DNA of 64,000 nt from Hemiscyllium ocellatum (lineage: Eukaryota), in assembly GCF_020745735.1 (NCBI RefSeq), contig NC_083450.1, forward strand, positions 4,605,479-4,669,478, read 5' to 3'. Positions 23,040-64,000 of this stretch are shown here, piece by piece (positions within the stretch are counted from its first letter, which is position 1; every line of letters begins with the position of its first letter). The notes beneath the pieces are model-generated. The model made no database searches. It saw only the letters and a program-made list of their open reading frames with translations, and was not told where the DNA came from. A program made the position numbers and the translations under genes.

Positions 23040-23330
23040 CCAACTAGTACCCCATCCCCATGGGAAAGAGTCCCCAGTTCTCCCCAGTCCTCGTGGGAAC
23101 AAGTCCCCCATTCTCTCCACACTGGGGAGTCCCACATTCTAGCCCACTGCCCATCGGAGTTAATCCTCCATTCACCCATTTCGCCCACTCCCTTTGGGAG
23201 CGAGTTACCCACTCACGGTGGCAGTGAGACCCATACCATGCCCACTCTCCATCAGAATGAGTTCCCTACTTCACACAACTGTCAGGGTGAAATTCTCCCA
23301 GTTTTCCCATTGGGATCATTGGCGTCATAG
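23040..23330 (+). repeat. C-rich ~30-bp degenerate tandem repeat (approx. cccactcccgtgggagcgagtcccccattct)
   Basis: Same family and orientation as 58650-58900. Confidence 0.75.
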
Positions 23331-23907
23331 CTCTTGCATCTCCACCCCCCACTTCCGATCTCAACGCACACCAAACCCCACAACTGAAAAATTTTACGCT
23401 AAGGTAAGAGTGGACCGGTTTCTTTGAGTTATATCTGTAACAACCTGAGCAAAAACTAACATAAAAGCAAGCTCCGAGACATGATTTGCAAATGTGATTG
23501 AAACAAAATAGGGCTTTGCAAAAAGTCCCTCAGATCTGAGATCTGGGTTAAGGTGAATTTTGGAAAAAGATGCTGTTGTCACGCCTGGGTACATTTGAGT
23601 AATTTGACTCCATGCATTTTTTAATTCACCACTTTGAGAGCCGAGTTGATTTTATTGTACAAGGTGCCTTGCTAGTGGAATAATTTAGAAGGGAAATCTT
23701 CACACCAGTCAATCGCATCAAAATGCTAGCTTCAATCACATCTAATGGTCACAAAAATAAAATAAAATTATGCATACCCTTTTTAAAACAGAGCAAATTA
23801 TCTCTGTATTGGTAAAATACGATAATCCTCTGGCATTAAAATGTTTGCTCAATTTCTAATACAACTGCAAAAGCTGCTGATTCTACAATGCTTCCTGAAA
23901 GAGTTCT

Positions 23908-23976
23908 ACCAGCCACAGTCTTGTCTGAAAACAGGAAATAGACCAGCCACAGTCTTGTCTAAAAACAGGAAATAGA
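23908..23976 (+). repeat. 34-bp tandem duplication, each unit containing the ETS-like CAGGAAAT
   Basis: accagccacagtcttgtct(g/a)aaaacaggaaatag x2. Confidence 0.85.
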
Positions 23977-24589
23977 ACAGGATAGACATAAACACAGTAA
24001 AAAGCTAAGGGTGGGTGATCATCGGGCTGATCTGTGTTGCAGAAAGATCACCCAATACTCTGAGAAAATGACCAGGACACGCAGAAAACCCTTCACCAAG
24101 TTAAACTTTCATTTGCAAATACAAGCTGCATCAGAAAATCAGAAAACGTCTTTCCTGTCTTTTCTCATTTCCTCTCTTACCTGGTAGCATTAGGATAACC
24201 AATCATACCAGCTTGTTTTGTCTTTCTAAACTAATCACCTTGGGCCACACTGGTCTAACGCTTACAGTTAACCTATCACATTACACCACCATCGTCTTAG
24301 CATTAGTTCATCTATAACGTGATTTAAATAGCCTATCATACCTGAGTCCTGCAATATCATCCTATGCATGCATTATACCAATAAGTTAATGACGTGACTG
24401 CCAAATTAACTTCCATACATTCCGTACCTGTTGCTTGGGAAACCCTACAATCGCTTGGTTCATGTTTTCTCCATTCTCACAGGGAGTATTGTGGATGAAG
24501 TTCCAGACGAGCATGGCACGCCATAAATGCATTTGTTTATTCATTTTAATCTTAGTCGAGGTTATGACTCCGTGACTGGTAGACTCTCG

Positions 24590-24930
24590 AGAAAATCAGC
24601 ACGCTGCAAAGATTAAGCAGAGAGTTTCCTGTTAATGGATTCAGAGGTCAGAATCGACATTTGCTGGATATCTCTGTAGCCTGATATATATTTTCATCCT
24701 GCATCTGGCTGACGCTGTGATTGATACATATCCTTATTCTGCTGCTGGGCGGCGCAGTCACTGGCGTACATCCTGATCCACATCGCTGGGTCTCTCTGCG
24801 ACTGATATATAGCTTTATGCTCACCGCTGGATGTCGCTGTGACTGATATATGTCCTCACCTCTGCCGCGGGTCGGTCCTTTGACTGAAACATGTCTACAT
24901 TCCTGCTGCTGGGCGATTCTGAAACTGATA
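24590..24930 (+). promoter_or_regulatory. Cassette boundary element A: ~40-45 bp units with CTCF-like motifs
   Basis: CTGCTGGGCGGCGC (24742), CCGCTGGATGTCGC (24824), recurring ctgatatat...cctca; homologous to 38800-39145 and 63790-64000. Confidence 0.55.
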
Positions 24931-26024
24931 TACAGGAAATGTGGTCCTGTTAGAGTGATGAATAAGGCTGGTAGGAGGAGGGAACAATAGATCAATAGAT
25001 GTTGGTCAAGAATAAGAAGGAAGCATATGTCAGGTACAGACAACTGGGCTTGTGAACCTCTTGAAGAGAATAAGGGAACAGAAGTATTCTTTCTTGGCAG
25101 ATAAGTTTAAGGAAATCCAAGGAGATTCTATAAAAAATGTTGTCAGCAAAAGGCAGAGGAAACATGGGAACACAACCACCTGCAAGATCCCCTCGAAGCC
25201 ACACATTCTAACTTCAATATATATCCACCATTCCTTCAATGTCACCTTGTCAAAATTCCAGCAAGCACTCCCTAAAAGCACCATGGATGTCGCTCCGTAC
25301 TACACAGGTACTGTGAGGGTTCTAGAAGGTGGCTCATCATCTCTGGCTCAAGGGGAAGCTAGCATTAGGTAATAACCGTTTGCACAGCCAGGAACGCCCA
25401 CTTCCCCTGAAATTGCAAAGTAAAAATAAACATGTGGAAGCTTGCTGAACACAGATTGGTTGCCATGTCGGTGTCACCTTAAAATGACAACACGACTAAA
25501 AAGTGATTCATTGGCTGTAAAGCACGTTGGGGCATGCCAAAGTTCTGAACGGTGCTATCCCAATGCAAGTTCTCCCCCTTGATCTAACTGAGCAGCAATA
25601 CATCAGACATGACATTGTGAAGGACAATAAGTTGAACTGAAAATCGAAGGGAACAAAGGAAGTGCTACTGACAGCCTTTGACCAACACTGATTTTAGAAG
25701 TGCTTCATTTTCTCTAAAGCAAAAATACTATAAAAGTTCAATTAGGATTGATAAATGCAGCCCTTGGCGACGGCGTGGCGGGGAATTTACTAGAAAGGGA
25801 CAAGGGATGAGGGTCTTCAGTTTAAATTTCGCCCTCTTCCTCCTTGCTCATGAAACCCTTCATGAATGTAAATTTGCACATGTCAATCTCCTTCAAGACA
25901 CAGATGTTTGCCCTGTCCTTTAGCAACAGGCCATTAATTCTCAGAAGAAAAAATACATATGATTTCTCCAGACCCTTTCCTGGGTTTTTTAAAGGACTTT
26001 GTATCAATTCAAGAACTTTTCAAA

Positions 26025-29000
26025 ACTGGTGGACGGTACAGAGATGGGGAGGGGTGAAGGGGCTGATGGAGGTGAAAGAGGTAGTGAGGGACGAATGGGC
26101 TAGAGGATGGAACAGATTGGGAAGGTTTGAGAGTTTGGAGGAGGTTGCAGGTACAGGGAGTAGCGTAACCACTAGAAAACGAGATAGGTAGGCATTTATA
26201 TTTGGAAAAGGCTTCAGAGATAGGGAAGGATGTAGGATCTGCAGGAGATTTAAGAGCCAGGGAGTGATATAGGAGCTGGAGCGACTTCAGAGGTATGAAA
26301 GGCTGTAGGTGCTGGTGGAGGCAATTGACATGGGCGGTCTGTGGAGGTTGGACGAATTTACACATAAAGGGAGGTTATATAAAGGGATGTGACAGAGATA
26401 GGGAAAGGTATAGGGCCTAGACGAGGTGATAGAGATAGAGAGGGGTGTTGGAGCTATAGGAGGTAACAAGGAATGGGTGGGCATAGAGGAGCCGATGGAG
26501 TTGACAGATGTAAGGTCTGGAGGAAGTAACAGAAATAAGGAGGCTGGAGGGATGATGGAGTTACAGACGTAAGGAGGCGTGTAGGAGATGGAGGAGATTA
26601 CTGAGACGGGGATGGGTTTGAGGGTTGGTGGAAGTCAGAGTGATAGGTAGATATTTAGGGGCTGGAATGAGTGAAAGATATAGTGAGGGGTATAGGTTCT
26701 TGAGGAGCTCACAGATTTAGTGAGAGATTGCAGAGTTTGGAGTAGATTAAAGTGATAAGCATTTTTCAATGTGATGGCGGAGGCTACGGTATAGGGAGCG
26801 GAGTAGGTTAGAGTTGCTGAAAGAGTTAGGATGCATGTAGGGACTGGAGTTAGTGATAGAGACAGCTCAATAGTGTAGTGGTTGGAGGAGAGCACAGAGA
26901 CTTGGAGTATCTCCATGTAGGGATAGAAGGCGTTACAGTAATAGGGAGTGATATAATGTTGGAAGAGATTGCAAATATTGCCAATGTTGTAGATGCTGGA
27001 AGAGATGACAGAGATTGGCTGGAGTTGGTAATAGCGATTTGGAGGATTGTTGTGGATGAAAAATATTGTTAGAAGTGGAGAGGGTTGCATAGATATGGAG
27101 AGGTGTCAGGTCTGATGGAGATCACAAGGGAAGGATATGGGGACCTCTAGTGGGTACAGAGACATTGAGAGCTGCAGGTGCTGGAGGCATTAAAAGAAAT
27201 AGGGAGGAATATGGGGTCTGCAGGAAATCGCAGAGATAGGGAAGTATAGAGGATCTGGAGATGGGTCTGGAGAAAGGGTGGGATATTGGGACTGGAGGAG
27301 GTGACAGTGGTGAAGATGGGTTTAGGGGCTGAAAATTGTTACAAATATGGGAGAGCATGGTTAGGAGTAGATTGCAGGATATGGAGAATTTTTAAGGTTG
27401 GAGGAGATGACAGAGTTAGGGAGGGGTTTAGTGGCTGAAGAAGTTTACAGTGGCGTAGGGATTGGAGGGGTGACTGAAGATAGAGACGGGTGTACCAACT
27501 GGGGAAGGAGAAAGAGATAGGGAGTGGTGAAGAGGCTGTAGAAGGTTACAGCAATAAGCGGGGAATAAGGGCGATTCGATATTTCTGCAGAATCATATTG
27601 TGACTAGCGGTAGTTATATGATTAGGAGAGGGTGCAGGCACTGGAGATATTTTCAGAAATTACAAGGAACCTAGAGTCTGGCAGAAGTGAAAGAGATAGA
27701 GGAGGATGTGGGAATTGTATTAGGGGATGGAGATTGTTTGGGATAATGGGTTGGAGAAGGTGGCAGAGATAGGCTTGGGATCCAAGGCTAAAGGAGATAG
27801 GGAGGGGCTCAGGAACTGGAGGAGGACCTGTTGATAGGGTGGAGAGTAGGAATTAGAGGAGGCAACAGAGACTTGGAGAAGTTCCAGGTCTGGAGGTGGT
27901 TACAGAGATAGGGATGGACATCAGATCGCAAGAAGCTTGCAGTGAAATTGAGTTGGCTACGGCCTGCAGGGGTTAGCAGAGCTAGGGAGTGGTATAGGGA
28001 CTTAAGGGTTTGATAGGGATGGAAATGGTCTGTAGGGGCTGGAAGATGTAACAGAGATATAGACTCAAGTAGGGGCTGGCGGAAGTGACGGAAATGAGGA
28101 GGGCTATAGTGGTAGATGGGGTTATGGAGTTAAAATGGGGTCTAGGAGATGAAGGAGTTTACAGAGAAAGGGAGGGGTTTGGTAAATGGAGGAAATCAGA
28201 GTGATAAGGAGAGATTCCGGTCTGGAGGGAATACAGAAATAGTGATGGGTATGTATTCCTGAGGAAGTTGCAGAGTTCCGAGAAGCTGTCGGGGCTCAAT
28301 TACATTAAGAGATAGGCACAGTCGTGTGTGCTGGTGGAGCACCGATATTGAGAGTGATATGTGGCTGGAGGTGTTCACAGAGATGGAGATAGGTATGGGG
28401 CAGATGTTGGTGACAGAGACAGGTGAGAAGTGTAGTGGCTGATGAACGTCACAGAGGTAAGGACGGATATAGGGTTGGGTGGGATTAAAGTAATAGGGAG
28501 CGGTGTAAGCATTGGAGGAGGTTACAAAGACTGTGAATGCTTTGGATGCTGTAGGAGGTGACAGAGATTGGGAGGGGTTGTATGGCTGCTGATGCTTAAA
28601 GAGATAGGGCGGATTGTTGTGGATGGAGATGATTGGATAGACATTGAGACATGTAGGGTCTCATGGAGAGTACAAAGAAGCTATATAAGACCTCAGGTGG
28701 TTACAGAGCTACGGAAAGGGTGTAGGTACTGGAGGCAATCACAGAAATAGGGAAGAATCTAAGTTTGGCAGGAAGTAGCAGAGCTAGGGAAGGGTGTAGG
28801 GACTGGCGAAGGATATGGATATTGGATGAGACATAGGGGCTGCACGAGGTGACCATGGTATAGAGGGGATTAGGAGCTGGAAGATTTTACAGCGATTGAA
28901 CGGGGCCTAGGTGCTGGAGGAGGTGATAGGGAGAGTTTCAGGGACTGGAGATTTACACTGTGAAATATTGGGTTCAGCGAATGAAGGAGATTACAGAGAT

Positions 29001-29630
29001 AGGGATTAGTTAAGTGTCTTGAGGATATGTTATAGAGGTGGGTAGGGGTTCAGCAGTGATTGGCGATATCTGGGGAACAATATTGGGACCTGAGGTGGTT
29101 ATAGAGATAGAGTCTGGAAGAGATAACAGAAGTACTGAGTGACCAAGGAGGTGATTGGAATAAGGAATGATGTAGTGGTTGGAGGAGATTGCGAGAATTG
29201 TACATGCTTGAGGTGGTTACTGAAAGACGAACGGGTGTAGGGGCTTGTTGAGGTGACAGAGTTAGGAAGGAGTGTTGGAGCCAGAGCGTGTTAAAGACAT
29301 AGGGAGGTGTTTCGGGAATGGAGGGTGTATCACAGACATTGTGTGCTTTAGGATCTATGGAGTGTTATTGGAAGGGGTGTAAGCGTTGGAGTAGAATATT
29401 ACAGAGATAGGAGGTGTGCTGAAGCTGGATGGAGTAACAGAAATGGAGAGAGAGGGAGGGAATGTAAGGTGTAACACAAATATGGAGCATTAAATGGCTG
29501 TAGAATGTTACAGAGATAGCGAAGGTTGTCAGAATGAATGAGCGAAAGCTGGAGTGAGATCCAATGTGGGGCTTGAGTGATTGGGAACAGGAGTGAAATG
29601 CAGAATAAGAGAGTACAAAGGACAAACATT
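26025..29630 (+). repeat. G/A-rich degenerate minisatellite, copy 2
   Basis: Same unit and strand skew as 1-1840. Confidence 0.85.
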
Positions 29631-30999: not shown

Positions 31000-31258
31000 C
31001 AGTGGTTAGCACTGCTGCCTTACAGTGCTAGATACCCGGGTTCAATTCCCGCCTCAGGCGACTGACTGTGTGGAGTTTGCACATTCTCCCCGTGTCTGCG
31101 TGGGTTTCCTCTGGGTGCTCCGGTTTCCTCCCACAGTCCAAAGATGCGCAGGTCAGGTGAATTGGCCATGCTGAATTGCCTGTAGTGTTAGTGGAATGGG
31201 GGAGGACTTGTTGGGCTTGTTGGGCCGAAAGGCCTGTTTCCACACTGAAAATAATCTA
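31000..31258 (+). mobile_element. Shark tRNA-derived SINE
   Basis: agtggttagcactgctgcc...gggttcaattccc...gtttccacactg. Confidence 0.9.
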
Positions 31259-32039: not shown

Positions 32040-32146
32040 GTCAGGAATTGCTCTGGGTTAACGTATATTTGTGAAACACTGGTCGGTTTTGTTTCACACC
32101 AGCTGGCAAAATAATTCAACGCACGCATGCATTTCCTCAATTGTAG

Positions 32147-32364
32147 GTACTTTGGCTGTTCCGGTTCTCAGTCAGAGTCCGGTGTCCGACCCACTCTCCG
32201 CCGGTCAGACGGCCCAATTCAAGTGTGCTATACAGAACGGTGATGTGGGCAGCTGCCAGGTGCATTGGTACAGTCAGACTCCCGGAGAAGCCCCGGTGTG
32301 GGTGATCATGCAAGTGACAATAACATTTTTAGAGGCACCGGTTTCACAGACGATTTCCAACCTT
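32147..32364 (+). pseudogene. IgL cluster 2 truncated V (FR1 to start of FR3), 1-nt frameshift, ends at poly-G
   Basis: GTLAVPVLSQSPVSDPLSAGQTAQFKCAIQNGDVGSCQVHWYSQTPGEAPVWVI[fs]HASDNNIFRGTGFTDDFQP, then a G run; no downstream J or C found. Confidence 0.92.
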
Positions 32365-33045
32365 GGGGGGGGGGGGGCGGGGGGGGGGGGGTGTGGAGTG
32401 GGAGAGGGGAGGGAGGTGTTGGTCAACTTTAGTTTTGTTTGCAACAGGAACAAAACATTCTAATGTATTGAACTTCACAATTTTAAAACTTGAATCAGGT
32501 AATAGCCCACAGCTCGCTATTTTCTTTTAGGAAGTGTCCCACGCAGGTCAATCTCTCCTGATTAGTCTAACCTCCCAATTCTGTCACTGATCTTGTCAAT
32601 GATAGCCCCTTTCAGGGTGCCTCTGTAATTTTGACAGATGTACTCTGGACTCTGTATCTTCATACAGTCTAACTAACAAGAGTTGATTGTGGGTAAAACA
32701 TGCGCCGAGTCAGGAGCTGCAAGCTGAGGGTCATAAACCGGCAACCCACAGAAAGATCTCTATCTCAGTTCTGTTTCCCACACCAGTCCTATTCACACAC
32801 ACGCGCGCGCGCAGATGCAAGCATACAAGCCCAACTTAAGCTCAGCCCCTTGGTGATGGATAATGAGCTCGCCCTAGAAGTGGGGCACTCGTTCCCTCTC
32901 ATCTCATCCAAAGTGAGTTATCCCTAATTCCACAGAGAAACTCGTGCAGGTTTTACTAAAGGCAGTGAGGGAATATTGTTCCCATTGGAGAGAGGGTCGA
33001 TAACAAGGTTTGGGTAGAGGAAGGGAATTCAGAAATGACTGTTTT

Positions 33046-37734: not shown

Positions 37735-38750
37735 CATTACTGATCGAAGGTGGGGACCAAATTTGAACATAGTTAAAGTCGCCACATTACCAAGAGGGTG
37801 TGGACGCTTTGGAGAGGGTGCAGAGAAGGTTTATAATGTATGGAATGTGCTAGCTATGAAGAGAGTTTGAGTAGGTTAAGATTGTTTTCATCAGAAAAAA
37901 GAGATTGTGGGGGAACCTGACTGAGTCTACAAAATCATGAAAGATATAGACGAGATAGATAGAGACAAGCTTTTTCCCAAGGTGATGGATTCAATAACGA
38001 GAGGTCACACTTTCAAACAGAGATGTGAAAAGTCTAAGGTGGATGCATGCAAATGGTGGTAGGGGCCTGAAATACGTTGGCAGCAGAGGTTGTAGAGGCA
38101 GGCAAGGTAGATTCGTTTGAGATGCGTCTGGACAGTTGCATGAGTAGGTGGGGAGCAGAGGGATACAGATGCTTAGAAATTGGGTGACAGGTTTAGACGT
38201 GGATTTGGATCAGTTCAGCCTTGGAGAGCCAAAAGGCCTGTCCTTAGGCTGTAAATTTTCTTTCTTCTTTGTTCTTTGCTCATTCTACAATTACATGAGC
38301 ATAATAATCGTGGGGCTGAATGATTAATAAGAGAACCCCACTGGTAAGGTGCGAGACTTGTTCTATGAGCAGCTAAAACCTGTACTCACTACTATTTAGG
38401 AGAATGAAAGGAGAGCTAATTGAGGGTGCTGAATCAGGTTGATAAAGTAGACGTGACTCATGTGGGGCTATCTAGTCGGAGAGGTCATGATTTTATGGTA
38501 AGAGCTAGTCGATGTACAACAGAGATGGGGAGGACAGATTTCTCTCAATGGATTGTGAATCTGTGGAGTGTGATGGCTGCCAGGCCACTGAGTAACTTTG
38601 AGGTGAAGATAGATTTTAATATAAGAATGGGTTAGCGGGACAATGGGGACTGGGCAAGAAAGTGATGTTGAGGCTGAAATGAGGTCAGCCATGATGGCAT
38701 TGTAAGGTGGAACAGACTGGAAGGGCTGAATTCCTCCACTTCTATACCTT
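37735..38750 (+). mobile_element. Two degenerate CR1-type LINE 3' fragments
   Basis: ggtgtggacgctttggagagggtgcagagaagg...gagaggtcacactttcaaa; aggagaatgaaaggagagctaattgagg... Confidence 0.65.
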
Positions 38751-38799
38751 ACGTTTCTGTCTCCCTGCAGAGACTGGGCACCCTTGAAAAGTCTGGGTG

Positions 38800-39145
38800 T
38801 CCATAAGCAGAACAGAATCAGAGATTCGATTCAGAATGTTTGATCTAATCAGTTCTCCAGCTATTTCCTGGTCCGAGTTTGAAAGAAAGTAGAGTTAATA
38901 CAGAAATGATCTCAATGTTATTATTTTCTCTCGATGGATTTGAAGTCCAGGCTAAGCATTTACTGGAGGTGAGCAGCATCAGCATCCCTGCCACATGGTG
39001 GCATGGTGACTGATGTATATCCATAATACAACCACTAATTGGCTCTGTGACTGAGATCTATTCTCATCCCTGCCGCTGAGTGATGTTATAGCTCATGCAT
39101 CTATTGTACACCCGAACACTCAACCTTGCCACTAGGTGGCGATGA
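38800..39145 (+). promoter_or_regulatory. Cassette boundary element B with CTCF motifs
   Basis: CCACATGGTGGCAT (38991) and near-canonical CCACTAGGTGGCGA (39129); the 5' part aligns with 63790-63940. Confidence 0.65.
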
Positions 39146-39149
39146 ATTG

Positions 39150-39850
39150 TTTGAATGATTTATTGTCACAGTTTTTTAAAAATTTGATTTATTATTGTCA
39201 CATGCAGCTAGGTGCAGTGAAACGTTTCTGTTTTGCGAGCTGGAGAGGCAGATTATATGTTGCAAAATACAGCAAAGGATAACAAAGCAGAGTGAAGAAT
39301 ATAATATTATGGCTGCAGAGAAGGCACACAAAAAAAAACGAGACTAACATGGAAAGTACAAATTGTGAGGTCCAGTCAGAAACCTAATGAAAGCGGAGCA
39401 GAAACCTTTCCTGAAACTATTCGTGTGTGTATTTAAACTTTCGTATCTTCTGCCTGACAGAGGAGGTTGGAAGAGATTACAACAGAGGTGGGAGGAGTTT
39501 TTGATTATATTGGCTGCCTTCCCGAGGCATTGAGAAGTCTGGATGGAGTCGATAGATTAAAGGTTGGTTTGCATGATGGGCAGGGCTGTGTTTGAAATTC
39601 TCTGTAATTACTTCTGGTCCTCAGCAGAACAGTTGCCCTGGTGCATTTGGATAGAATGCATTGCCCGGTGCTTCTGCAAATATTGTGAAGAACGATTATG
39701 GGCATGCCAAATTTTCTTAGCCTCCTGAGGAAGTAGAGGTGTTCTTGGGTTTGCTTGACTGTGACGTCAACATGAGTGGACGAGGGCAGATTGTTGGTGA
39801 CCACCATTCCTCAGAACTTGACGCTCTGAACGATCGCCAAATCAGCATCA
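39150..39850 (-). mobile_element. Rex1/Babar-like LINE RT 3' fragment interrupting the CTCF array
   Basis: Minus frame HVDVTVKQTQEHLYFLRRLRKFGM, similar to the KKAQQRLYFLRRLRKF motif of Rex1/Babar elements. Confidence 0.65.
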
Positions 39851-40389
39851 CTAACGTGGAAGGATAAGTGAAAAGTGTTTCATCACCACATTCTAGCATC
39901 AATCGGAGTTACAAAACGGATAAAAATAAGTTACATGAACAGAGTTCATCCTCTCTACAAAGGGTGTTCAAACACAGCTCCAGAGCTTCTGAAAGGTTTT
40001 CGCAAAATTCTCTGGGCCTCGGGGACACCCCGTTCCAGACACACAGATGATATCATGAAGAGTTCAGCTTAAAACAGACCAAAGCCAATTGTATCCGCAC
40101 TGGGCATTGCCTCCACCACTGTGACCAAGTGTCCCTGCACCAGACACCATCATCACCACAGCTGATGACTGCTGAGCACTGCCTTAATCGATTACCTGCC
40201 TTGTCTAGTGTTTGCAGCTCAGACAGGGATCTAAATCCCAACTCCACAGTCCTTGCATGTCCACAATTTATCCCTGTTAACACAATATGAGCGATACATA
40301 TTCTCGGGACAATGATCTTTGGCACTCTAACTGATATACATCTGATGCAGCATGATGCTGTAAGTAATACTGTATTCCTGTACATTAGA

Positions 40390-40600
40390 GCGACTCAGTC
40401 ATCGCTGCCGTTAGGTGGCGATGTGTGATGTTTTTAAAAATATATAAGCACTGATTCGCGCCGCGTTTTACACAGTAACTTATATTTATCCAGATTACTG
40501 TTGCTGTAGCTATAACCGCTATATACCTCCATCAAAACGCTGGGTGCTCTACTGACTTATATATATCCTCATCCCAACAACTAGGCGGCGCTATGAATGA
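40390..40600 (+). promoter_or_regulatory. CTCF-motif array, continuation of element B
   Basis: CCGTTAGGTGGCGA (40408), CAACTAGGCGGCGC (40578), with unit context tatatcctcatccc. Confidence 0.6.
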
Positions 40601-40606
40601 CGTACA

Positions 40607-41720
40607 TAGAACATTACAGCGCATTAGAGGCCCTCCAGCCCTCAACATTGCACTGACCTGTGAAGCCAATCCGAAGACCATCTAACTATTTTCGTCCAAA
40701 TGTTTATCAAATGACCATTTAAATGCCCTTAAAGTTGACGAGTCTACAACTGTTGCAGGAAGTGCGTTCCACACCCTTACTACTCTCTGAGTAAAGAAAC
40801 TACGTCTGATATCTGTCCTACATCTGTCACCCTCAATTTAAAGCTGTGTCCCCTCATGTCTAACCTCTCTAACCTTCTGATTATCTTATATGGCTCAGTT
40901 AAATCACCTTGCAACCTTCCTCTCTCTAACGGAAATAGCCTCAAGTCCCTCAGCCTTTCCTCAGAAGACCTTCCTTCCATACAGGCAATATCCGAGTAAA
41001 TCTCCTCTGAACCCTTTCCAATGTTTCGCATCCGTCCTATAATGTGGTGACCAGAACTGTATGCGATATTCCAAGTGTGACCGCACCAAAGGTTTATACA
41101 GCTGCAGCATGACTTCATGGTTCTGAAACTCAATCCCTCTACTAATAAAAGGTAACACATAATATGCCTTCATACCAGCCCTATTACCCTGGGTGGTAGC
41201 TTTCAGGTATCTATGTACATGGACACCGAGATCTCTCTGCTCATCTACACTGCCAAGAATCTTACCACTAGCCTAGCACTCTGCATTCCTGTTACTCCTT
41301 CCAAAGTCAATCACCTCAAACTTTTCCGCATTAAATTCCATGTGCCGCCTCTCAGTCCAGCTCTGCAACTTATTAATGTCCCCCTAGAACCTACAACATC
41401 CTTTGGCACTCTCCACAATTCCACTGACCTGTGTCATCCACAAATTTACTAACCCAACCTTTTACGTCCTCATCCAGCTTGTTTATAAAGATGACAAACA
41501 ACAGTGGGCCCAAACAGATCCTTGCGGTACACCACAAGTAACTAAACTCCAGGATGAACATTCCCCATCAACCACCACCCTCTATCTTCTTTCAGCTAGC
41601 CAATTTCTGATCCAAACCATTAAATTGCCCTCAATCCCATGCTTCCTTATTTTGTGCAGTAGCCTACTGTGGGGAACCTTATCAAACGCCTTACTGAAAC
41701 CTATAAACATCACATCAACC
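40607..41720 (-). mobile_element. CR1-type LINE RT 3' fragment
   Basis: Minus frames FISRGIEFQNHEVMLQLYKPLVRSHLEYRIQFWSPHY; plus strand cagtgggcccaaacagatccttgcggtacaccac. Confidence 0.88.
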
Positions 41721-42027
41721 GCTTCATGTTGCTGTGACTGACGATTTCTCCCCCCACACTCATCACTTTCCTTTCACGTTCCCCTAAGTCAGCTCTTCCA
41801 TGCCTGTGTAACCTTAAATTATAATCATTGCAACTTTTCTTCCATATCCAGCTAGTTCAAAAACAATACAAAAGAGTGAATCTGGAATTTTGTCTCTAAG
41901 GCAAAGAGGGATCATCAACTGCAGTTGCACAAATTACGTCAACAATTTTGATAAAGACATCAATTTCTCCTACACTGAGCAATTATTGGTTTGTGTGGTG
42001 GAAAATCTCTGTGCTCCCATGCACTAC

Positions 42028-42140
42028 GGAGGCAAGGTGGCTCGGTGCTTAGCACTGCTGCCTCACAGCACCAGGGACTTGGGTTCAATTTCTGCATTGC
42101 GTGTCTGTGTGGAGTTTGCATACTCTCCCCGTGTCTTTGT

Positions 42141-42171
<31 letters not shown>

Positions 42172-42350
42172 ACAGTCCAAAAATGTACAGGTCAGGTGAA
42201 TTGGCATTGCTAAATTGCCCATGTTGTTAGGTGCATTAGTCAGGTGTGAATGCAGGGTTGGCAGATGGGTATGGCTGGGTTACTATTGGGAGGGTCAGTG
42301 TGGACTTACTGGGTGGATGGGCCTGTTTCCATAATGTAGGGAACCTAACT
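42028..42350 (+). mobile_element. Shark tRNA-derived SINE (diverged)
   Basis: ggtggctcggtgcttagcactgctgcctcacagc...gggttcaatt... Confidence 0.85.
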
Positions 42351-42439
42351 GAAATAATGCACTTCTTTCCCAGATTCATTCCTTTTGAATTACCAAGGAA
42401 ATTGTTTGCATCCTGTCACTCCTTATTGCTGCTCTCTGG

Positions 42440-42540
42440 TACCACTAGGTGGCACTTTGATACGCACTTGCCCACGACCGTTCAGAGCAGCTTGGCTCTG
42501 ACACTTGCAGCTGCGACCGTCTGCCATTAGGTGGAGCTCC
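42440..42540 (+). promoter_or_regulatory. Pair of CTCF motifs
   Basis: CCACTAGGTGGCAC (42442) and CCATTAGGTGGAGC (42524), same orientation as the other sites. Confidence 0.6.
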
Positions 42541-42614
42541 TAGGTCACCAGAACGTGCAGATTACCAGAGTTTTCCAAACTGCAGCTCGGATCTCTGTTC
42601 TGCTGCAACAATAT

Positions 42615-43460
42615 TGGCACTAAACTTCAGTCTGTTTCTCTCCCTCTCGCTATCACTCACGCTACCGCCTCATTATTTTTCTCCCTCTCCTTCTCCAGCT
42701 CTTTCTCTGCCTCTTATCATCCCTCCCGCTGGAACGTCTCTTTCATGGACCTTCTGTCACACCCTTCCCTTGCTCCCTGACGATCTCTCTTTCTCTGTCC
42801 CCCCCCCTTCACTTCAATCCTCCTCTCACTCCTGTGCTCTCTCACTCTCACTCACATCTCGCTCTCTCACTTGCTCTCTCTCTGTCTTCCCTCCCTACTT
42901 TACTGTCTCTTTCCCTCGCCTCTCTCTTCACCCCGTTCCTCTCTTTATCTCTGTCTCACCCCTACCACAATACACACTCTCTTACTGTCCCTCACTCTCT
43001 TCCCTCTCTTCCTCTCCTTCTCCCTCCATCCCTCTGTACCTCTCCTTCAGCCCCCTTTTTCCACACTCCTAGCTCTTCTCACTCACTCACTGTCGCTGTC
43101 TCTCTCTCTCTGACATCCCTCCATCCCAATCTCTTAGAATCTCTTCTTCCTCTCACTCTCTGTCTCTCTTTCTTTCACCTTCTCTCTTACACTGTCTCCC
43201 AAACATATCCTCTCGCTCGTCCTTTCTCTCACCTTCTTTGTTTCTAACTGTGTCAGTCTCACACATGCTCTCCTCACTACCTCTCTCTCCCCATCTCTTG
43301 TTTTCTAGCTGCCTCACTCTCCCCTCTCCTGGCCACTCCTTCCCCACCCCCATTCCCCATAGTGTTATTCTCTCTCACACAGTCTCTCTCTCTCTTCTCT
43401 CTCCCTCAGCCTCCACGACCTTACTGTCGAACCCTCCCTCTCTTCTGCTTGACCACGCCT
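42615..43460. repeat. CT-rich (polypyrimidine) low-complexity tract
   Basis: Composition; ORFs here are Ser/Leu/Pro artefacts. Confidence 0.85.
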
Positions 43461-45029: not shown

Positions 45030-48000
45030 CAGCAAAATGTAACATTTTACTGGGGTGGATGGAATGGAGGAGTATACAGAGAGAGAAAGAGGTTACAGTG
45101 GCTGGAGGAGGTGACACAGACTGAGAGGGATGTAAGGGTGGGAAAAGGTAATGGGGTAGGGACAGATACAGGGACTGGAGGGGGAGGTGGAGTGGGGAGG
45201 ATGAGGGCGCTAAAGTAGGTGACAGAGAGAGCAGGCTGTTGGGCTTGAGGCGGTGACAGAGATAAGGAGGCGTGTAGGGCTGAAGGACGTGCCAGAAGTA
45301 GGGAAAGATGTAGCGACTAGAGGAGGCTACAGAGACAGACAGCACTGCAGGGACTGGATGGGACCACACCGACAGGGTGGAGTTCAGGGGCGGACTAGGT
45401 TACAGACTTGGGGAGGGGTGTTGGGGCTGGAGAGGTTACAAAGATGTGTGCAGGGGGATGGAGAGGATTAAAGAGTAAAGAGGGATTGAGAGGTTGGAGG
45501 AGGTTACGGAGATGGCATGGGTGTAGGTGCTGGATGAGAGTCTACTGAAGGTCTGCACCTTAATTGTTCAATAAGGGGTCTGTGAGGCTGAGACGGTGGG
45601 AGCAGAAAAATCGACTTTGGGAGCTGTCAACAACAGCCTGATTCCACTATTTCACAGTCGGGTGAATAGCAGGGGGAGGTTGTGTCCTTGTTCATTCAGC
45701 CGTTGGCAAAAGTTGAGGGAGTTGCTCTGCCAAAGGACTACATTCCCTGTCCCACGCTTGTTCCCCATACACCAACTCAGTGGACTTAGCATCCCCAATA
45801 GGCTGTCCAGGACGGACTCACCATCGATCCTTGGATTTATAACACTTCTGTTAGGGACCAAGGATCCAATGATTCAACCCAAGAACAAAAGCACTCTCAA
45901 ATCCAGGCCAATGAAATCAGCATGTAGAGGATGAATCAGTTGGTCACCCAGCTCTTCAACCCTGACTGTTTCTTAACTGGCAACCTTGTAGCCAGACTGG
46001 AGAGTTCATTTTAGCCAGTCATATATATAGGTAACTTAAATACAATGACATACGTAAATTAATTGTTTTTCCCTTTGAAATTTGGGTTTATTCCATTTGG
46101 ATTGGTAAGTGAAACATGTCTCCTTTTTCCAACCGCACTGAGGTTCTGCACTGCCAAGTGACTCAACTCAATAATTATAAGTTCTACTACATTAAATGGC
46201 CATAATTTGTCCAGGATTTCCTTCAACTTAGCTCGCTGATATGTTACATCATGGAGACAGAAAGTTAAACCTTTGCATCTCTGTATTGCAACCACAGCAA
46301 CATTTAAAACTTCAATGACTCTCAAAATTGACCCTAATGGATTCTAACTAGATATTTTTGAACATCAATCTCAACCATGATGAATACTCAATTCTCGATA
46401 CCAGCTTGCACCTTTAATAAAAGATTTAGTTCTTATTGACAATATATGAACTTTGGCAAAACAGGGTTGAACAACAACGTAATTAGTCTCTGCTAGACAT
46501 CTTTTGTTGTCAGCGACATTTACAGAAAAGACAGGCCTACATTCCAGGGGAAAGAAAACATGGCCTACTTAGGCTCTCCATAAGCCTCAAATCCCAGCAT
46601 CATCCCTGCAATTCTCTTCTGCATCCTTTCAAGTTTAACAACATCTTTCCTATGGAAAGGAGAACAGAACTGAAGAAAGTATTATGAAAGTAGATCAAAC
46701 AATGCCCTGCACAGTCATGACACACCATAGGCCCTTTTCAACACCGTGACTACCTTTAACTCCACTTTCAAGGAACTCTGCACCTCCACCCCTTGGTCAC
46801 TCTGTTCCACAGAGCCATGCAATAAATTTGCAAGTCCTGTCCTGCTTTGGTTTCACAAAATGTGACACTTTATTGAGGTGGAGAGGCTGAAGGAGGTTAT
46901 AGAGAGAGGGAGAGAGTTGCCGCTGCAGGAGGAGACCGAGATCAGAAGTAGTGTTGGTTCTGGAGGAGAATTTGGGAGAAGCGTAGGACTGAGGTAGGTG
47001 ACAGAGATAGCAACGAGATTAGAGGCCAGATGAGGCTCCAGTGATGGTGGGGGGGGGGGGGGGGGGTAACAGAGACAAGAGGGATGTATGGGATGGAGAA
47101 GGTTGCAGAGGTAGGGAGTTGTGTAGGAGTTGGTGGAGATTACAGAGAGAGACGGAGGAGTGCAGGAGCTGGATGGAGTGGCAGAATAAGCAGATGGATA
47201 TGGACTGGTGGTCGTTTCAAAAAGAGGGTGGAGTGCTACACCCGGATTGGTTACAGGTTTAGCAAGGGGTCAAGCGGTTGGAGGAGGTTAAACAGGTAGA
47301 GAGAGGTGTAGGGGCTGGAGTGTTTAACAAGATTGGGAGAGGATGTCGAGGCTGCAGGAGTGCAGGAGTTAGGATGGCATGAGGAGTCTGCAGAATGTTA
47401 CAGTGAGAGGGCGGCTTGTAGAAAGTGGAGGAGGTTACAGAGTTAGTGGAAGATGTAGGAGCTAGAGGCAGTTATAGAAATAGGGAAGGTTGTTGGGGCA
47501 GTAGGAAGTAACAGAAGTAGGGCATGTTGCAGTGTCTGGAGGATGTTGCAATGTTTGGGAAATGTGGAGTGCATGGAGATATGCAATGGTGTAGGCTCTG
47601 GAGGGGTTGACAGAAATGCGGATGAAACAAGGGGCTGGAGGAAGTGGAAGAGGCAGGGAAGCCTGTAAGAATTGTAGGAAGGTATTTGGCAGAGTCATAT
47701 AAAGGTGTGTATAGGGTGTGGAGGATATGACAGAAATAGGGAGCGGTGTAAGAACTGGAGGAGGGTATGATCATAGGATGGGATATAGGAGCTACAGGAC
47801 ATTACTGAGATATGGAGGGTCGCATGCATAGGTGGACTTCAAAGAGATAGAGAATGCATATAGGAGTTGTAGAACTTTACAGAGTCAGGAGGGGTTAAAA
47901 GGCCCGAGGAAGTTACAGGGAGAAGGAATGTAGGGGCTGGAGAAAGAAACAAGTATGAAAGGATGTACAGCCGCAGGAGGTTATAAAAATCGGGAGGTGT

Positions 48001-48365
48001 AGAGGGAATGGAGGACATTTGAAGTAGGGCAGAGTATAGGCGCTGGTGGCAATTGCAGAAATAGGGAAGTATTTAGGGGCTGGATGTGGTTACAGAGATG
48101 GGGGAGGTTGCAGAGATAAATAGGGGCATAAGAGCTGAAGGATGTTTCAGAGGTTGGGAGCTGTATACAGGCTGGTAAAGTTACTGTGCTTGGGAGAGGT
48201 GCAGGATCAGGAGGATATATACAAACGTAGGCAGGGGTGTATGAGATGGAGAAAGTTACAGAGATAGGGAGGGAATGTAGGGGCTGGAAGAGGTGACAGA
48301 GATTGAGAGGGGTGTACGGGATAGAGGTGGTTACAGAGACAAGGAGGCATGAAACAAGGAATAAG
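45030..48365 (+). repeat. G/A-rich degenerate minisatellite, copy 3 (45030-45545 and 46870-48365, interrupted)
   Basis: Same unit and skew as 1-1840. Confidence 0.8.
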
Positions 48366-54950: not shown

Positions 54951-55052
54951 GATTGAGTTGAATGATCAACTAGGATCTAATCGAATTGATTGAGTTGAAT
55001 GATCAACTAGGATCTAATCGATTTGATTGAGTTGAATGATCAACTGTGATCC
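54951..55052 (+). repeat. 37-bp tandem repeat, ~2.7 copies, upstream of the cluster 3 promoter
   Basis: gattgagttgaatgatcaactaggatctaatcga(a/t)tt at 54951, 54988, 55025. Confidence 0.9.
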
Positions 55053-55394: not shown

Positions 55395-58181
55395 ATGTTT
55401 CCGATACTGCATCTGCTGTGTGTTCTGCTGCTCCACGTGACAGGTCAGAAATTGCTCGAGTTAAACATCCGTCCATTAAATATGTTTGTGTCAGCCCCAG
55501 TTCCTTTATTGTTCCCAAAGTCACTGGATGTGTGCATGTCTGTGTTTCTTTATGGTAGGTACCTTGGCTGATGCTGAGCCTGTCCTCAAACAGAGTCTAT
55601 TTTCCGACCCAGTCTCTGTTGGCCAGACCGCCCAGTTGAAGTGTGTGCTGCAGGATGATAATGTGGATACCTACGATGTGAGGTGGTACCGACAGAGTCT
55701 CGGAGAAACCCCAGTGTTTGTTATCCAGCATAAGATCAATGGTGAAATACACAGAGGCACCGGCTTCACTGACCGTTTCCAACCTTCACGAGACTCTCCT
55801 AACAACAGTTACATTCTAACCATCGGAAACGTGGTCTCTGGTGACTCTGCCGTCTATTACTGTGAAGTGTGGGGTTACATCTTTGGAGGTGGAACTGCCC
55901 TGATCGTCCGGAGTAAGTGGTTCTGTTTTCTCTCTATAAACTTTTTTTCAGATAAGTTGAATATGTATCGTTTCAGAGTCGATGCTGTTCTCTGTATGTC
56001 GAAAACATCACGATGTAATACATTTTGCAACATTTCTCACTCGTCCTCACAAGGCAAAGTATTGCGTCAATAATTTTCTCACAGATGCACACAGGGCAGA
56101 GAGTTGTTTATATTAATAATGTTGTCTCTTTCACATAAACATGTATCCACAGTCACATAGTCACTCTCTGCAAAAACGAANNNNNNNNNNNNNNNNNNNN
56201 NNNNNNNNNNNNNNNNNNNNNNNNNNNNNNNNNNNNNNNNNNNNNNNNNNNNNNNNNNNNNNNNNNNNNNNNNNNNNNNNNNNNNNNNNNNNNNNNNNNN
56301 NNNNNNNNNNNNNNNNNNNNNNNNNNNNNNNCAATTATTTTCCCACACAGGTTAATGTTTTATTAACAATTCTCTCTATTTTACGGAAACACACAGGACA
56401 GAGTGTTAATTGTCTCAAGAGTTCTCTCTATCCCTTTCCCTCTCCCTTTGTCACATGCACAGGTCAGAGATTAGAACATAGAACAAGACAGCACAAAACA
56501 GGCCTTTCGGCGCTCGATGTTGCACCGACCTGTGAACTAATCTAAGCCATTACCCTACATTATCCCATCATAATCCATATGCTTATCCAAAGACTGTTTA
56601 AATGACCCCAATGTGGCTGAGTTAACTAAATTGGCAGGAAGGGTATTCCATGCCCTTACCACTCTCTAACATCTGTCTTAAATCTATCACCCCTCAATTT
56701 GCAGCTATTCCCCCCTCGTACAAGCAGATGTCATCATCCGAGGAAAAGGTCTGTCACTCTCCGCCCTACTTAATCCGCTGATCATCTTGTCTGTCTCTAT
56801 TAAATCGTTTCTTAGCATTCCTCTCTCCAATGAGAACAGACCCAAGTCCCCCAGCCTTTCCTCATAAGTCCCCGCTCACTTCAGACCAGGCAACATCCTA
56901 GCAAATCTCCTCTGCATCTTTTCCAATGCTTCCACATCCTTCCTGTAATGGAACGATCAGAACTGCACACAGTATTCCAAGTGAGGCCGCACTAGCGTTT
57001 TGTACAGTTGCAGCATGACATCACAGCTCTAAAACTCAATCCCTCTCCCAATAAAACCAAACACACCGTCTGCCTTCTTAACAGCACCATCAATCTGAGT
57101 GGCAACTTTTGCGGATCTATGTACATGGGCAACAAGATCCCTCTGCACGTCCACACTCCCAAGCTTATTTCCATTGAGTTGAAAATGTGTTGCTGGAAAA
57201 GCGCAGCAGGTCAGGCAGCATGCAAGGAACAGGAGATTCGACATATCGGGCATAAGCCCTTCTTTGTTCCATTGACCCAGTTTTCTGCCTTCCTGCTATT
57301 CTTCCCAAAATGAATCGCCTCACATTTAACTGCATTGAACTCCATTTAGATCGAGTATCTCTCACATGCACAACTCAGTATTATGTTAATATTTCTCTCA
57401 CACACACGCACAGCGGTTACCATCTTGTATGAACCAATTATTCGCTGTTACACACAGGTCAAATGGTTATGTTAATAACTCTATCGTTCACACACACACA
57501 CACACACACTTCACAGTGTTATTCATGCATTAATCAATCACTCACTCTCGATCCCTTTCTGTCACACACCTGTACATGCACAGGTAGTTGTTATGTATTA
57601 ATATTTCTCTCTCTTTCACTAGCACATTAAAAAGTTAGAGTATTATAAATTTTTTTTTCTGTCTCTGTCCTACACACAAACACATAACATATCCGCACAT
57701 TTACATACACACGTCAAAGTGTTATCTGCAAAGATATTAATGATGCTCTGTCTCTTGCACAATTCAAAGTTTTATACAAATAAATAACTCTCCCTTGCAC
57801 ACATGGTCAGCGATTTTTATTCATATATATAACCCTCTCTCTCGCTTCCCTCACACAGGTAGTGATGATCAGAAACCATCTGTCCTGCTGCTCCCTCCTT
57901 CGCCAGAACAAATAGACACAGGATCAGCCACCATTTCCTGTCTGGTGAATCGCTTTAAGCCAGGTTTTGTGCAGGTCCTCTGGAGCGTGGATGGAAAAGA
58001 GACAGACAGTGGGGTGGCCACGAGCCCTGTGTCCCGGGACAGTGATCAAAGCTACAGTCTGAGCAGTTACCTGACAGTCCCGGCCACTGAATGGAAGAAA
58101 GGCTCCAGATATTCCTGCAGTGTGAGGCACGGTTCACTGAACTCACCTCTCCTCAACACCATCAGCTCCAACGAATGTTAG
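55395..58181 (+). CDS. IgL: Intact pre-joined Ig light chain (type I / sigma-cart, NS5-like): L-VJ-C
   Basis: Exons 55395-55443 (MFPILHLLCVLLLHVT), 55559-55912 (VJ) and 57859-58181 (C); phase-1 junctions, both Cys and Trp intact, FGGG, terminal Cys. Confidence 0.93.
55559..55912 (+). CDS. Joined VJ exon, CDR3 = EVWGYI
   Basis: ...QLKCVLQDDNVDTYDVRWYRQ...RGTGFTDRFQPSRD...DSAVYYCEVWGYIFGGGTALIVR|GTAAGT; no RSS between V and J. Confidence 0.95.
56030..57858 (+). repeat. J-C intron degenerate tandem repeat of cluster 3, with an assembly gap (56181-56331) and a nested minus-strand CR1/Penelope insertion (~56470-57350)
   Basis: Same cacacaggt.../attaataa..ctctc units as 4620-8530; run of N; LINE tail tagaacatagaac. 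Confidence 0.8.
57859..58181 (+). CDS. IgL constant (C1) exon
   Basis: SSDDQKPSVLLLPPSPEQIDTGSATISCLVNRFKPGFVQVLWSVDGKETDSGV...YSLSSYLTVPATEWKKGSRYSCSVRHGSLNSPLLNTISSNEC*. Confidence 0.97.
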
Positions 58182-58476
58182 CTCTAAGGTATACAATGTC
58201 ATGGGTCAGTCCCATCGTGCAATGTGGCGTTTTGTTGTTTGTTTCTGTTTTGCAATGCAATTTCTCAGCAATATCAGTATTTGGTGAACAATCTGAATGT
58301 CGAAGAATGTCAGAAATCAGTGAAATGATTGTTCCATTTGGTGAGTAGGGATTTCCTGCTACAATTGCCTCCAACATTTTGCGTGTAACCTTTGACTTTG
58401 GGTAGAACAGCGAGCAATCTCCCCTTCTAGACAATGGCCATGTTGTATTTGTGAAGTTTGCATGAAAGAAGATATG

Positions 58477-63789: not shown

Positions 63790-64000
63790 GAGGGATTCGA
63801 TTCAGAATTCTTGCTCTATTCGTTTTGGTGAATATTGCCTGCACGAATTTTAAAGAAAGTAGACTGAGTGGAAAAATCACAGGAGTGCAGAGAGTTTCCT
63901 GTTGATAGATTCGGAGCCTCGGATCGGCATTCGCTGCAGGACAGATAGATACTCAACCCTTCCGCTGGCAGATGCTAAGACCGATATATATTATATAAAA
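63790..64000 (+). promoter_or_regulatory. Start of cassette boundary element C (runs off the window)
   Basis: gattcgattcagaat/aaagaaagtaga match 38822-38895; gcagagagtttcctgtt matches 24619-24635; then ccgctgg...gatatatatt units. Confidence 0.6.

What the first reader, a model, noticed from the sequence alone, without database searches (positions are those of the whole stretch)
38800..42540. Array of same-orientation CTCF motifs between IgL clusters 2 and 3
Seen: at least six CTCF-core matches, all on +: 38991, 39129 (CCACTAGGTGGCGA), 40408, 40578, 42442 (CCACTAGGTGGCAC), 42524. Several sit in a shared ~45-bp unit (tgatatatatcctcatccc...). Established: oriented CTCF sites block cohesin loop extrusion and limit RAG scanning in mammalian Igh/Igk, and shark V(D)J recombination is largely confined within clusters. 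Inference: tandem-amplified CTCF arrays may insulate individual shark Ig clusters.
Basis: partly seen in the sequence, partly recalled or inferred. Interest (0 to 1): 0.75.

Follow-up and report, generated by a model that had tools for sequence, protein, structure and literature searches.

The report
CTCF-like repeat array between shark antibody clusters
Between two shark antibody light-chain gene clusters lies an old, single-copy 41-base tandem repeat, broken up by mobile-element insertions, whose units here resemble the binding site of the genome-folding protein CTCF; it could be a one-sided boundary facing the next cluster, but binding is untested and the sister copy in the same window has no such sites.

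Summary
All six motifs are at the stated coordinates. Two are strong CTCF-core matches (39126, 21.4 bits; 42439, 17.8 bits), three are moderate (42521, 40405, 40575), and one (38988) is weak and scores equally on both strands. Six '+' hits of at least 10 bits in 3.7 kb compare with 0.15 expected (0 of 2000 shuffles).

The hits are not independent. Sites a–f belong to a decayed 41-bp (not ~45-bp) minisatellite, split by an unclassified multi-copy insert and followed by LINE and SINE insertions. Sites g and h share only the 12-base core with it.

The repeat is single-copy, not a genome-wide family. It is part of the duplicated IgL cluster unit, with positional homologues at 24680–24935 and from 63937, each behind a C-exon flank. 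The scan had already reported the same array just upstream of this window (s1-191605).

The sister array at 24.7 kb has no CTCF-grade core: its consensus scores 6.8 bits against 20 here. Two of the three consensus differences are CpG decays. The flanking clusters are dead or germline-joined, and no convergent partner site is in the window.

Best reading: a fossil minisatellite that acquired CTCF-grade cores in this copy. It is a plausible forward-facing barrier towards cluster 3, but neither binding nor selection is shown.

The parts
38905..38968 (+). Conserved flank that precedes every copy of the array. It is homologous to 24617-24666 and 63887-63936.
   Evidence: Three-way alignment A1; blastn 24617-24666 vs 63887-63936 at 80% identity.
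38969..39147 (+). Array C block 1: four 41-bp units.
- a: core at 38991, weak, palindrome-like.
- b: core at 39032, decayed.
- c: core at 39073, decayed.
- d: core at 39129, 21.4 bits, the strongest CTCF match in the window.
   Evidence: nhmmer unit hits E 1e-6 to 6e-5; top autocorrelation lags 82 and 41; single-copy depth 31-61; PWM scores.
39148..40038 (.). Multi-copy interspersed element inserted into the array, also present in two related species. Its class was not determined.
   Evidence: Depth 6e2-3e4 against about 40 in the flanks; contigs of organisms B and C bridge the left junction. No other copy in the window.
40039..40383 (.). Single-copy spacer with no detectable 41-bp periodicity. 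Its origin is unclear.
   Evidence: Depth 34-65; no significant lag; no homology to array B.
40384..40600 (+). Array C block 2: unit e (core 40408, 12.1 bits), three decayed units, and unit f (core 40578, 11.7 bits). CpG observed/expected is 1.27.
   Evidence: nhmmer E 6e-7 and 1.4e-6; local alignment to block 1 z about 9.5 and to array B z about 12; phased print; CpG count.
40601..41781 (-). LINE 3' fragment. It is related to copies at 56879-57154 and 63245-63520, and is shared with related species.
   Evidence: Repeat family D3; depth 1e5-1e6; blastn 40857-41372 vs 63127-63646.
42032..42355 (+). SINE insertion. Family copies lie at 15422-15597 and 31000-31175.
   Evidence: Repeat family D6; depth up to 1e7 and loose ends at 42031-42036.
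42439..42457 (+). Site g: strong CTCF-core match CCACTAGGTGGCAC (17.8 bits, p 5e-7) in single-copy DNA about 85 bp beyond the SINE.
   Evidence: Only the core matches the repeat unit.
42521..42539 (+). Site h: moderate CTCF-core match CCATTAGGTGGAGC (14.5 bits, p 4e-6). It lies 82 bp (2 x 41) after g.
   Evidence: Flank homology to the repeat is not significant.
24680..24935 (+). Array B: paralogous array of six units phased at exactly 41 bp. The core consensus is CCGCTGGGCGGC and the best CTCF score is 10.9 bits.
   Evidence: Phased print; lag-41 identity 0.48 against a null 95th percentile of 0.36; consensus scores.
63937..64000 (+). Array D: first 1.5 units of the next array, 5.76 kb behind C3, cut off by the window end.
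   Evidence: nhmmer hit 63942-63976; alignment A1.

Best explanation
This is an old, single-copy 41-bp minisatellite that belongs to the duplicated IgL cluster unit, which runs: 37-bp satellite field, V, J, C, 3' flank, 41-bp array.

In the copy at 38.97-40.6 kb the unit core reads CCACTAGGTGGCG. It probably derives from a CpG-rich CCGCT(G/A)GGCGGCG core through two CpG decays and one further transition. That turned several units into good CTCF motifs. An unclassified multi-copy element later inserted into the array, and a LINE and a SINE inserted just after it. Together with the g/h pair, this spreads the motifs over 3.6 kb.

The two strongest sites (39126 and 42439) could probably bind CTCF. 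If bound, their '+' orientation would stall cohesin arriving from the downstream side, that is from cluster 3. They would then act as a one-sided upstream barrier for that cluster, not as a 3' anchor for the cluster they follow.

Nothing found here shows that this property has been selected for. The most likely status is a neutral fossil repeat with incidental CTCF competence. What is shown: the anatomy, the paralogy, the single-copy status and the motif strength. What is inferred: the ancestral core, CTCF binding and the barrier direction.
For: - Repeat nature and 41-bp phase.
- Positional homology of arrays B, C and D behind the C-exon flank.
- Single-copy depth of the array bins in two individuals, against 1e3-1e7 in the inserted elements. 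The same junctions occur in two related species at about 94-96% identity, so the interrupted state is old.
- Motif strength and enrichment.
- Lineage-specific CTCF-likeness. Array B consensus scores 6.8-9.2 bits and array C consensus 20 bits. Two of the three consensus differences are CpG to TpG/CpA changes. Units c, e and f still keep one or other CpG, and D's first unit reads CCGCTGG.
- Decay of units b and c and of the three units between e and f.
- Listed differences in organism B are 6 substitutions plus 1 deletion in the 179-bp block 1, against 12 plus a 6-bp deletion in the 268 bp of unique flank. That gives no excess conservation.
- The CTCF motif and orientation code hold in skate (PMC10115646), and the motif is the same from lamprey to human (PMC5504073).
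Against: - The only two motif matches above 17 bits in 64 kb both lie here. They are co-oriented with each other and with the Ig genes.
- Sites g and h share no detectable flank homology with the repeat. They could therefore be independently kept sites, and clustering of separate CTCF sites is typical of real boundaries.
- The array with the good motifs is the one upstream of the only intact gene in the window.
- Block 2 has a CpG observed/expected of 1.27, which could mean germline hypomethylation (small numbers).
- The direction of the core change (B-like to C-like) is inferred from CpG chemistry only.
Confidence: 0.55

Rival explanations
1. The array is a functional, selected CTCF boundary. 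It acts as a forward-facing, IGCR1-like upstream barrier for the next IgL cluster. It keeps cohesin-driven RAG scanning, or enhancer action, from running into the preceding cluster. Arrays next to dead clusters, such as array B, have simply decayed.
For: - Two strong and three moderate co-oriented motifs, 0 of 2000 shuffles.
- '+' orientation is the one that would block upstream scanning from a J-based recombination centre, by analogy with IGCR1 in mouse Igh (PMC10293834).
- The strong array precedes the only intact gene, and the decayed array B precedes a deleted cluster.
- The CTCF code is conserved in skate.
Against: - Cluster 3 is germline-joined (continuous ORF through YYC...FGGGT), so it has no RAG scanning to confine.
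- Most units have decayed, and mobile elements have inserted into and beside the array.
- There is no excess conservation of block 1 between species.
- The CpG-decay route implies the cores were methylated in the germline.
- There is no '-' partner above 12.4 bits in the window.
- The comparison of arrays rests on only 2-3 copies.
Confidence: 0.3
2. The repeat is a binding array for another factor, or part of a 3' regulatory element of the upstream cluster. One example is the GC-box-like GGGCGG core seen in array B, or the TGACTGA spacer motif. On this reading the CTCF resemblance is a side effect.
For: - The inferred ancestral core CCGCTGGGCGGCG contains GGGCGG, and the spacer TGACTGATATAT is the best-kept part of array B.
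- Without later insertions the array lies only about 1.6 kb behind the C exon. That is a typical place for a 3' element.
Against: No matrix for another factor was tested. The spacer is poorly kept in array C. Units decay freely.
Confidence: 0.1
3. The motifs are a chance cluster or are carried by a transposable element, with no link to the Ig clusters.
For: Three multi-copy inserts (one unclassified, a LINE and a SINE) lie among the motifs.
Against: - 0 of 2000 shuffles reach the observed count.
- All motif-bearing bins are at single-copy depth, and the motifs lie outside the multi-copy stretches.
- Other SINE copies in the window lack the core.
- The arrays are positional homologues within the cluster unit.
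Confidence: 0.05

Closest known systems
Mouse Igh 3' CBEs ('super-anchor': ten consecutive CTCF-binding elements downstream of the locus)
   Same: A run of co-oriented CTCF-type sites lying behind an immunoglobulin constant region (PMC10293834).
   Different: The mouse sites point back into their own locus, convergent with the VH sites. Here the motifs are on the gene strand and point away from the cluster they follow. The mouse sites are separate bound elements spread over kilobases, not a 41-bp minisatellite. Binding is proven in mouse and untested here.
IGCR1 (CBE1/CBE2) in mouse Igh and Cer/Sis in Igk
   Same: They sit between gene-segment domains. The downstream-facing CBE acts as the upstream stop for RAG scanning from the recombination centre. 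Array C has that orientation relative to cluster 3 (the orientation logic is inference).
   Different: IGCR1 is a divergent pair, whereas this is a same-direction array. Here the downstream cluster is already joined in the germline. No functional data exist.
CTCF-binding tandem repeats (DXZ4, Firre, D4Z4 macrosatellites) and closely spaced '2xCTS' double sites
   Same: The CTCF motif is reiterated by tandem duplication (PMC3491370 and PMC10832218, listed; the details are from my own knowledge).
   Different: Those have kilobase units, or are pairs of sites with shown occupancy. This has a 41-bp unit, about 9 recognisable units, most of them decayed.
Transposon-borne CTCF site expansions (mouse B2 SINE; lamprey hAT-Tip100, PMC5504073)
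   Same: CTCF motifs are multiplied by a repeat mechanism.
   Different: Here the motif is in single-copy DNA and was multiplied in place, not by transposition.
The same 41-bp array reported by this scan 2.7 kb before the window start (s1-191605) and 46 kb before it (s1-191667)
   Same: Same period, same strand, and the same place behind an IgL cluster. The array at 24.7 kb here is its paralogue at the 27.7-kb duplication distance.
   Different: Those copies could not be read here. This copy is the one with the strongest motifs in this window and is stretched by three insertions.

Membership tests
CTCF-binding element / insulator cluster | Sequence match to the vertebrate CTCF core motif at a stringent threshold | tested here: met
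   d 21.4 bits (p 3e-8), g 17.8 (5e-7), h 14.5 (4e-6); e and f about 12 bits (1.5e-5); a is weak and its strand ambiguous. The matrix was recalled from memory; the IUPAC scan agrees.
CTCF-binding element / insulator cluster | CTCF occupancy in vivo (ChIP-seq, CUT&RUN or footprint) | not testable with these tools
   Only whole-genome contigs were available, and no shark Ig plus CTCF paper was found.
CTCF-binding element / insulator cluster | Insulation or loop anchoring in contact maps, or enhancer-blocking activity | not testable with these tools
   No Hi-C or Micro-C data were accessible.
CTCF-binding element / insulator cluster | Motif kept in paralogous or orthologous copies beyond neutral expectation | tested here: not met
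   Array B: best 10.9 bits, consensus 6.8. Orthologues: cores a, c and d have no listed change, b is changed in organism B, and the block-1 rate is about equal to the flank rate. The difference list was truncated, so e-h are unknown.
CTCF-binding element / insulator cluster | Convergent partner site bounding the domain | tested here: not met
   No '-' hit above 12.4 bits anywhere in the window, and none above 10 bits between 58.2 and 64 kb. A partner beyond the window is possible.
Minisatellite | Head-to-tail units of constant period (10-100 bp) | tested here: met
   41-bp phase. Array B lag-41 identity is 0.48 against a null 95th percentile of 0.36. Blocks 1 and 2 have top lags 82/41 and 81/40. 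Block-to-block alignments give z of 9.5-12. TRF did not call it because it is too decayed.
Minisatellite | Unit-number polymorphism between individuals | tested here: not met
   Contigs of two samples of the source species match the array with 0 differences. This is a fossil repeat, not an active one.
Transposon-borne CTCF sites | Motif lies inside a dispersed multi-copy element | tested here: not met
   Motif-bearing bins are at single-copy depth. The multi-copy stretches are 39.15-40.04, 40.6-41.78 and 42.03-42.35 kb only.
Igh-type 3' CBE super-anchor | Tandem sites behind C that point back into their own locus | tested here: not met
   All motifs are on '+', the same strand as V to C. They therefore point away from the preceding cluster.

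The most novel reading that the evidence does not exclude
Each shark IgL mini-locus carries its own forward-facing CTCF barrier, built from a minisatellite. The barrier stops cohesin-driven scanning or enhancer reach from entering the preceding cluster. It would be a compact counterpart of IGCR1 in a cluster-type Ig organisation. Its CTCF sites would have been born in place, when CpG decay of a GC-rich repeat created the motif.
Probability: 0.2. Interest if true: 0.75.

Novelty: new variant of a known kind. Interest (0 to 1): 0.45.

Why it matters
How shark antibody clusters stay independent of each other is an open question, both for recombination within a cluster and for expression of one or a few clusters per cell. 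In mice, oriented CTCF sites do this job in the Igh and Igk loci.

A per-cluster CTCF array would make the question testable in cartilaginous fish. It would also show how a boundary can arise from a tandem repeat.

As it stands, the sequence gives a well-defined candidate: two strong sites with a known orientation. It also gives a caution. The sister array lacks the motif and no selection is seen, so the element may be a neutral relic.

Tried and rejected
- Tandem Repeats Finder did not report any of the three arrays because they are too decayed. A unit profile with nhmmer found them instead.
- I tried to fetch orthologous or paralogous contigs through ORFs that cross the arrays. None of four ORFs is in the protein collection, so I dropped that route and made no large protein search.
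- Per-base conservation of e, f, g and h in the related species could not be read. The difference table of read laying was truncated ('516 more are not shown') and the single call was used.
- I tested whether g and h are repeat units. Only the 12-base core aligns (score 24 against a null of 18.5 ± 2.6). The 82-bp spacing (2 x 41) remains suggestive only.
- I tested whether the 345-bp and 290-bp single-copy stretches (40039-40383 and 41740-42030) are decayed units. They show no periodicity and no homology.
- I looked for another copy of the first insert in the window and for tRNA-like parts. There were none.
- A literature search for CTCF in shark Ig loci found nothing relevant.
- The chance and transposon-borne readings were rejected.
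Full report
**Context.** The window is a tandem series of light-chain (IgL) cluster units on the + strand. Earlier notes of this scan call the genome epaulette shark; I did not verify the species.
- tblastn and Pfam place a frameshifted V at 3656-4023 and a C1-set exon at 8544-8876 (cluster 1).
- A separate V-set plus C1-set gene lies at 13.5-14.4 kb.
- A broken V lies at 32071-32363 with no C (cluster 2).
- A V-set ORF at 55486-55935 reads straight through YYC...FGGGT, so V and J are joined in the germline. A C1-set exon follows at 57795-58181 (cluster 3).
- An assembly gap at 56181-56331 was left alone.

**The observation.** The exact 12-mer CCACTAGGTGGC occurs twice in 64 kb, at 39129 and 42442. 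An independent IUPAC scan agrees with it. The '+' scores are:

| Matrix hit start | Site | Bits | p |
|---|---|---|---|
| 39126 | d | 21.4 | 3e-8 |
| 42439 | g | 17.8 | 5e-7 |
| 42521 | h | 14.5 | 4e-6 |
| 40405 | e | 12.1 | 1.4e-5 |
| 40575 | f | 11.7 | 1.8e-5 |
| 38988 | a | 10.0 | 4e-5 |

Site a scores 11.0 on the other strand, so its orientation is undefined. The region 38900-42600 has six '+' hits of at least 10 bits, against 0.15 expected, and none of 2000 dinucleotide-preserving shuffles reached that count. It holds five of the nine hits of at least 11.5 bits in the window and both hits above 17 bits. The cluster is therefore real.

**What the motifs sit in.** The hits are not independent.
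- Printing the sequence in lines of 41 shows a decayed head-to-tail repeat. Its consensus is roughly TGACTGA-TATATCCTCATCCC-TGCCACTAGGTGGCG-(A/T)TG.
- A profile of six units finds block 1 (38969-39147, units a-d) and block 2 (40384-40600, unit e, three dead units, unit f).
- The two blocks align to each other with z of about 9.5, and their top autocorrelation lags are 82/41 and 81/40.
- The unit is 41 bp, not about 45 bp.
- Sites g and h are 82 bp apart (2 x 41) and share the core with d. Their flanks do not align to the repeat (score 24 against a null of 18.5 ± 2.6). I treat them as a nearby pair of CTCF-type sites whose descent from the repeat is likely but not shown.

**Insertions and copy number.** Contigs from four public runs were laid at 80% or more likeness.
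- The motif-bearing bins sit at single-copy depth (about 20-65). These are 38700-39101, 40040-40575 and 42452-42700.
- By contrast, 39.10-40.04 kb, 40.58-41.78 kb and 41.92-42.45 kb reach 1e3 to 1e7. They correspond to an unclassified interspersed element, a LINE 3' fragment on the minus strand and a SINE (families D3 and D6).
- Two samples of the source species match the array without any difference, so it is no longer an unstable minisatellite.
- Two related species (coded B and C) have contigs that bridge the array/insert junctions at about 94-96% identity. The interrupted layout therefore predates their split.
- In block 1 the listed differences for organism B are six substitutions and one 1-bp deletion in 179 bp. 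The 268 bp of unique flank has twelve substitutions and a 6-bp deletion. Cores a, c and d show no listed change and b has one. That is what neutrality predicts at about 5% divergence.
- The difference list was truncated, so e-h could not be judged.

**The array is part of the cluster unit.** The unit profile also hits 24680-24935, which holds six units in perfect 41-bp phase (lag-41 identity 0.48 against a null 95th percentile of 0.36). It also hits 63942-63976 at the window end.
- All three arrays start after the same flank (alignment A1; 24617-24666 against 63887-63936 at 80%).
- 35.0-38.9 kb is colinear with 59.6-63.9 kb, the sequence behind C3.
- The sequence behind C1 (8895-10433) is colinear with 58200-63729 and then jumps to 24617. 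Cluster 1 therefore carries a 14.2-kb insertion, which holds the V-C1 gene, between its C flank and its array.
- Cluster 2 lost J and C: 32411-32681 matches 9651-9927.
- Upstream of each V lies a 37-bp satellite field (families D1 and D2).
- The ancestral unit was thus: satellite field, V, J, C, about 1.6 kb of flank, 41-bp array. Every pair of successive clusters in the window is separated by one array.
That position is exactly one 27.7-kb duplication period from array B. I could not read that DNA.

**Is CTCF-likeness a property of the family?** In this window it is not.
- Array B's best score is 10.9 bits. Its consensus core CCGCTGGGCGGC scores 6.8-9.2 bits, against 20 bits for the array C consensus CCACTAGGTGGC.
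- The three consensus differences are CCGC to CCAC and GCGG to GTGG, which are both CpG decays, and TGG to TAG.
- Other units of array B read CTGC, the decay product of CCGC on the other strand.
- Units c, e and f of array C each keep one of the CpGs, and D's first unit reads CCGCTGG.
- CpG loss is strongly directional, so the CpG-rich, poorly CTCF-like core is probably ancestral. The founder unit of array C (about CCGCTAGGCGGCG, 13.6 bits) then gained strength by parallel CpG decay (+3.2 and +4.4 bits).
- This implies the cores were methylated in the germline for a long time, which does not fit constant CTCF protection there. It says nothing about B cells. This paragraph is inference.

**How it would work if bound.** The CTCF core and upstream motifs are the same from lamprey to human (PMC5504073). 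Skate TAD boundaries show MA0139.1 motifs oriented towards the domain interior (PMC10115646). Using the mammalian matrix and orientation rule in a shark is therefore reasonable.
- A motif on the + strand faces downstream. Array C would stall cohesin coming from cluster 3.
- Relative to cluster 3 it is placed like the downstream-facing IGCR1 site that ends upstream RAG scanning in mouse Igh. It is not placed like the ten 3' Igh CBEs, which point back into their own locus (PMC10293834).
- With all arrays in one direction each cluster would have a guarded 5' side only. No '-' site above 12.4 bits exists in the window.

Several points count against a role in recombination at this particular spot.
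- Cluster 3 is already joined and cluster 2 is a remnant.
- Motif prediction alone is a poor predictor of occupancy, a caveat PMC5504073 states itself.

**Verdict.** However, it reflects one amplified unit plus a nearby pair of sites.
- Most likely (about 0.55): a fossil, single-copy minisatellite inherited with each IgL cluster. In this copy it drifted into CTCF-grade cores. The two strong sites may well bind CTCF, but no selection for that is visible.
- A selected per-cluster boundary remains a live rival (about 0.3). The strong array precedes the only intact gene and g/h may be independent sites.
- A different-factor element (about 0.1) and chance or transposon origin (about 0.05) are less likely.

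I found no paper on CTCF in shark Ig clusters, so the idea is new to the searched literature. The scan has, however, already raised it for the neighbouring copy of this same array.

Noticed in passing
window 10433-24617: A 14.2-kb stretch has no counterpart behind C3 and sits between the C1 3' flank and its 41-bp array. It carries the separate V-set plus C1-set gene at 13.5-17.8 kb, so that gene appears to have been inserted into an IgL cluster unit.
   Followed up: partly
window 32071-32681: Cluster 2 is a deletion remnant. The broken V, followed by a 27-base G run at 32365-32391, joins directly onto sequence homologous to the C1 3' flank (32411-32681 matches 9651-9927). J and C are gone.
   Followed up: partly
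window 157-1426, 26025-29323, 45101-48347: A field of degenerate 37-bp repeats (CAGAGATAGGGAAGG...GGAGCTGGAGGAGGTTA) of 1.3-3.3 kb lies upstream of each V and is colinear between cluster units. Its function is unknown.
   Followed up: no
window 40384-40600: Block 2 of the array has 12 CpGs in 217 bp (observed/expected 1.27, against 0.41 for the window). This includes a cgcgccgcg run. It may indicate local germline hypomethylation.
   Followed up: no
window 54951-55045: A nearly perfect 37-bp tandem repeat (2.6 copies, 98% identity) lies about 440 bp upstream of the ORF that holds the germline-joined V3.
   Followed up: no
window 18070-18425: A 31-bp AT-rich tandem array (about 9-11 copies, TTTATAAATGCCAGCAGTAACATTGTATTTT) lies just behind the V-C1 gene.
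   Followed up: no
window 40340: Organism B carries an 8-bp insertion here in two allelic forms (TCCGAAAT and TCCGAAAC), 44 bp before block 2 of the array.
   Followed up: no
same genome, other pieces (earlier notes s1-147971, s1-170741, s1-148707, s1-148600): The scan lists several other minisatellites read as co-oriented CTCF-like arrays near promoters (POLR1E, UBE2J2, SON). If real, CTCF-like cores in tandem repeats are common in this genome. That would lower the specificity of the Ig association. I did not check this.
   Followed up: no
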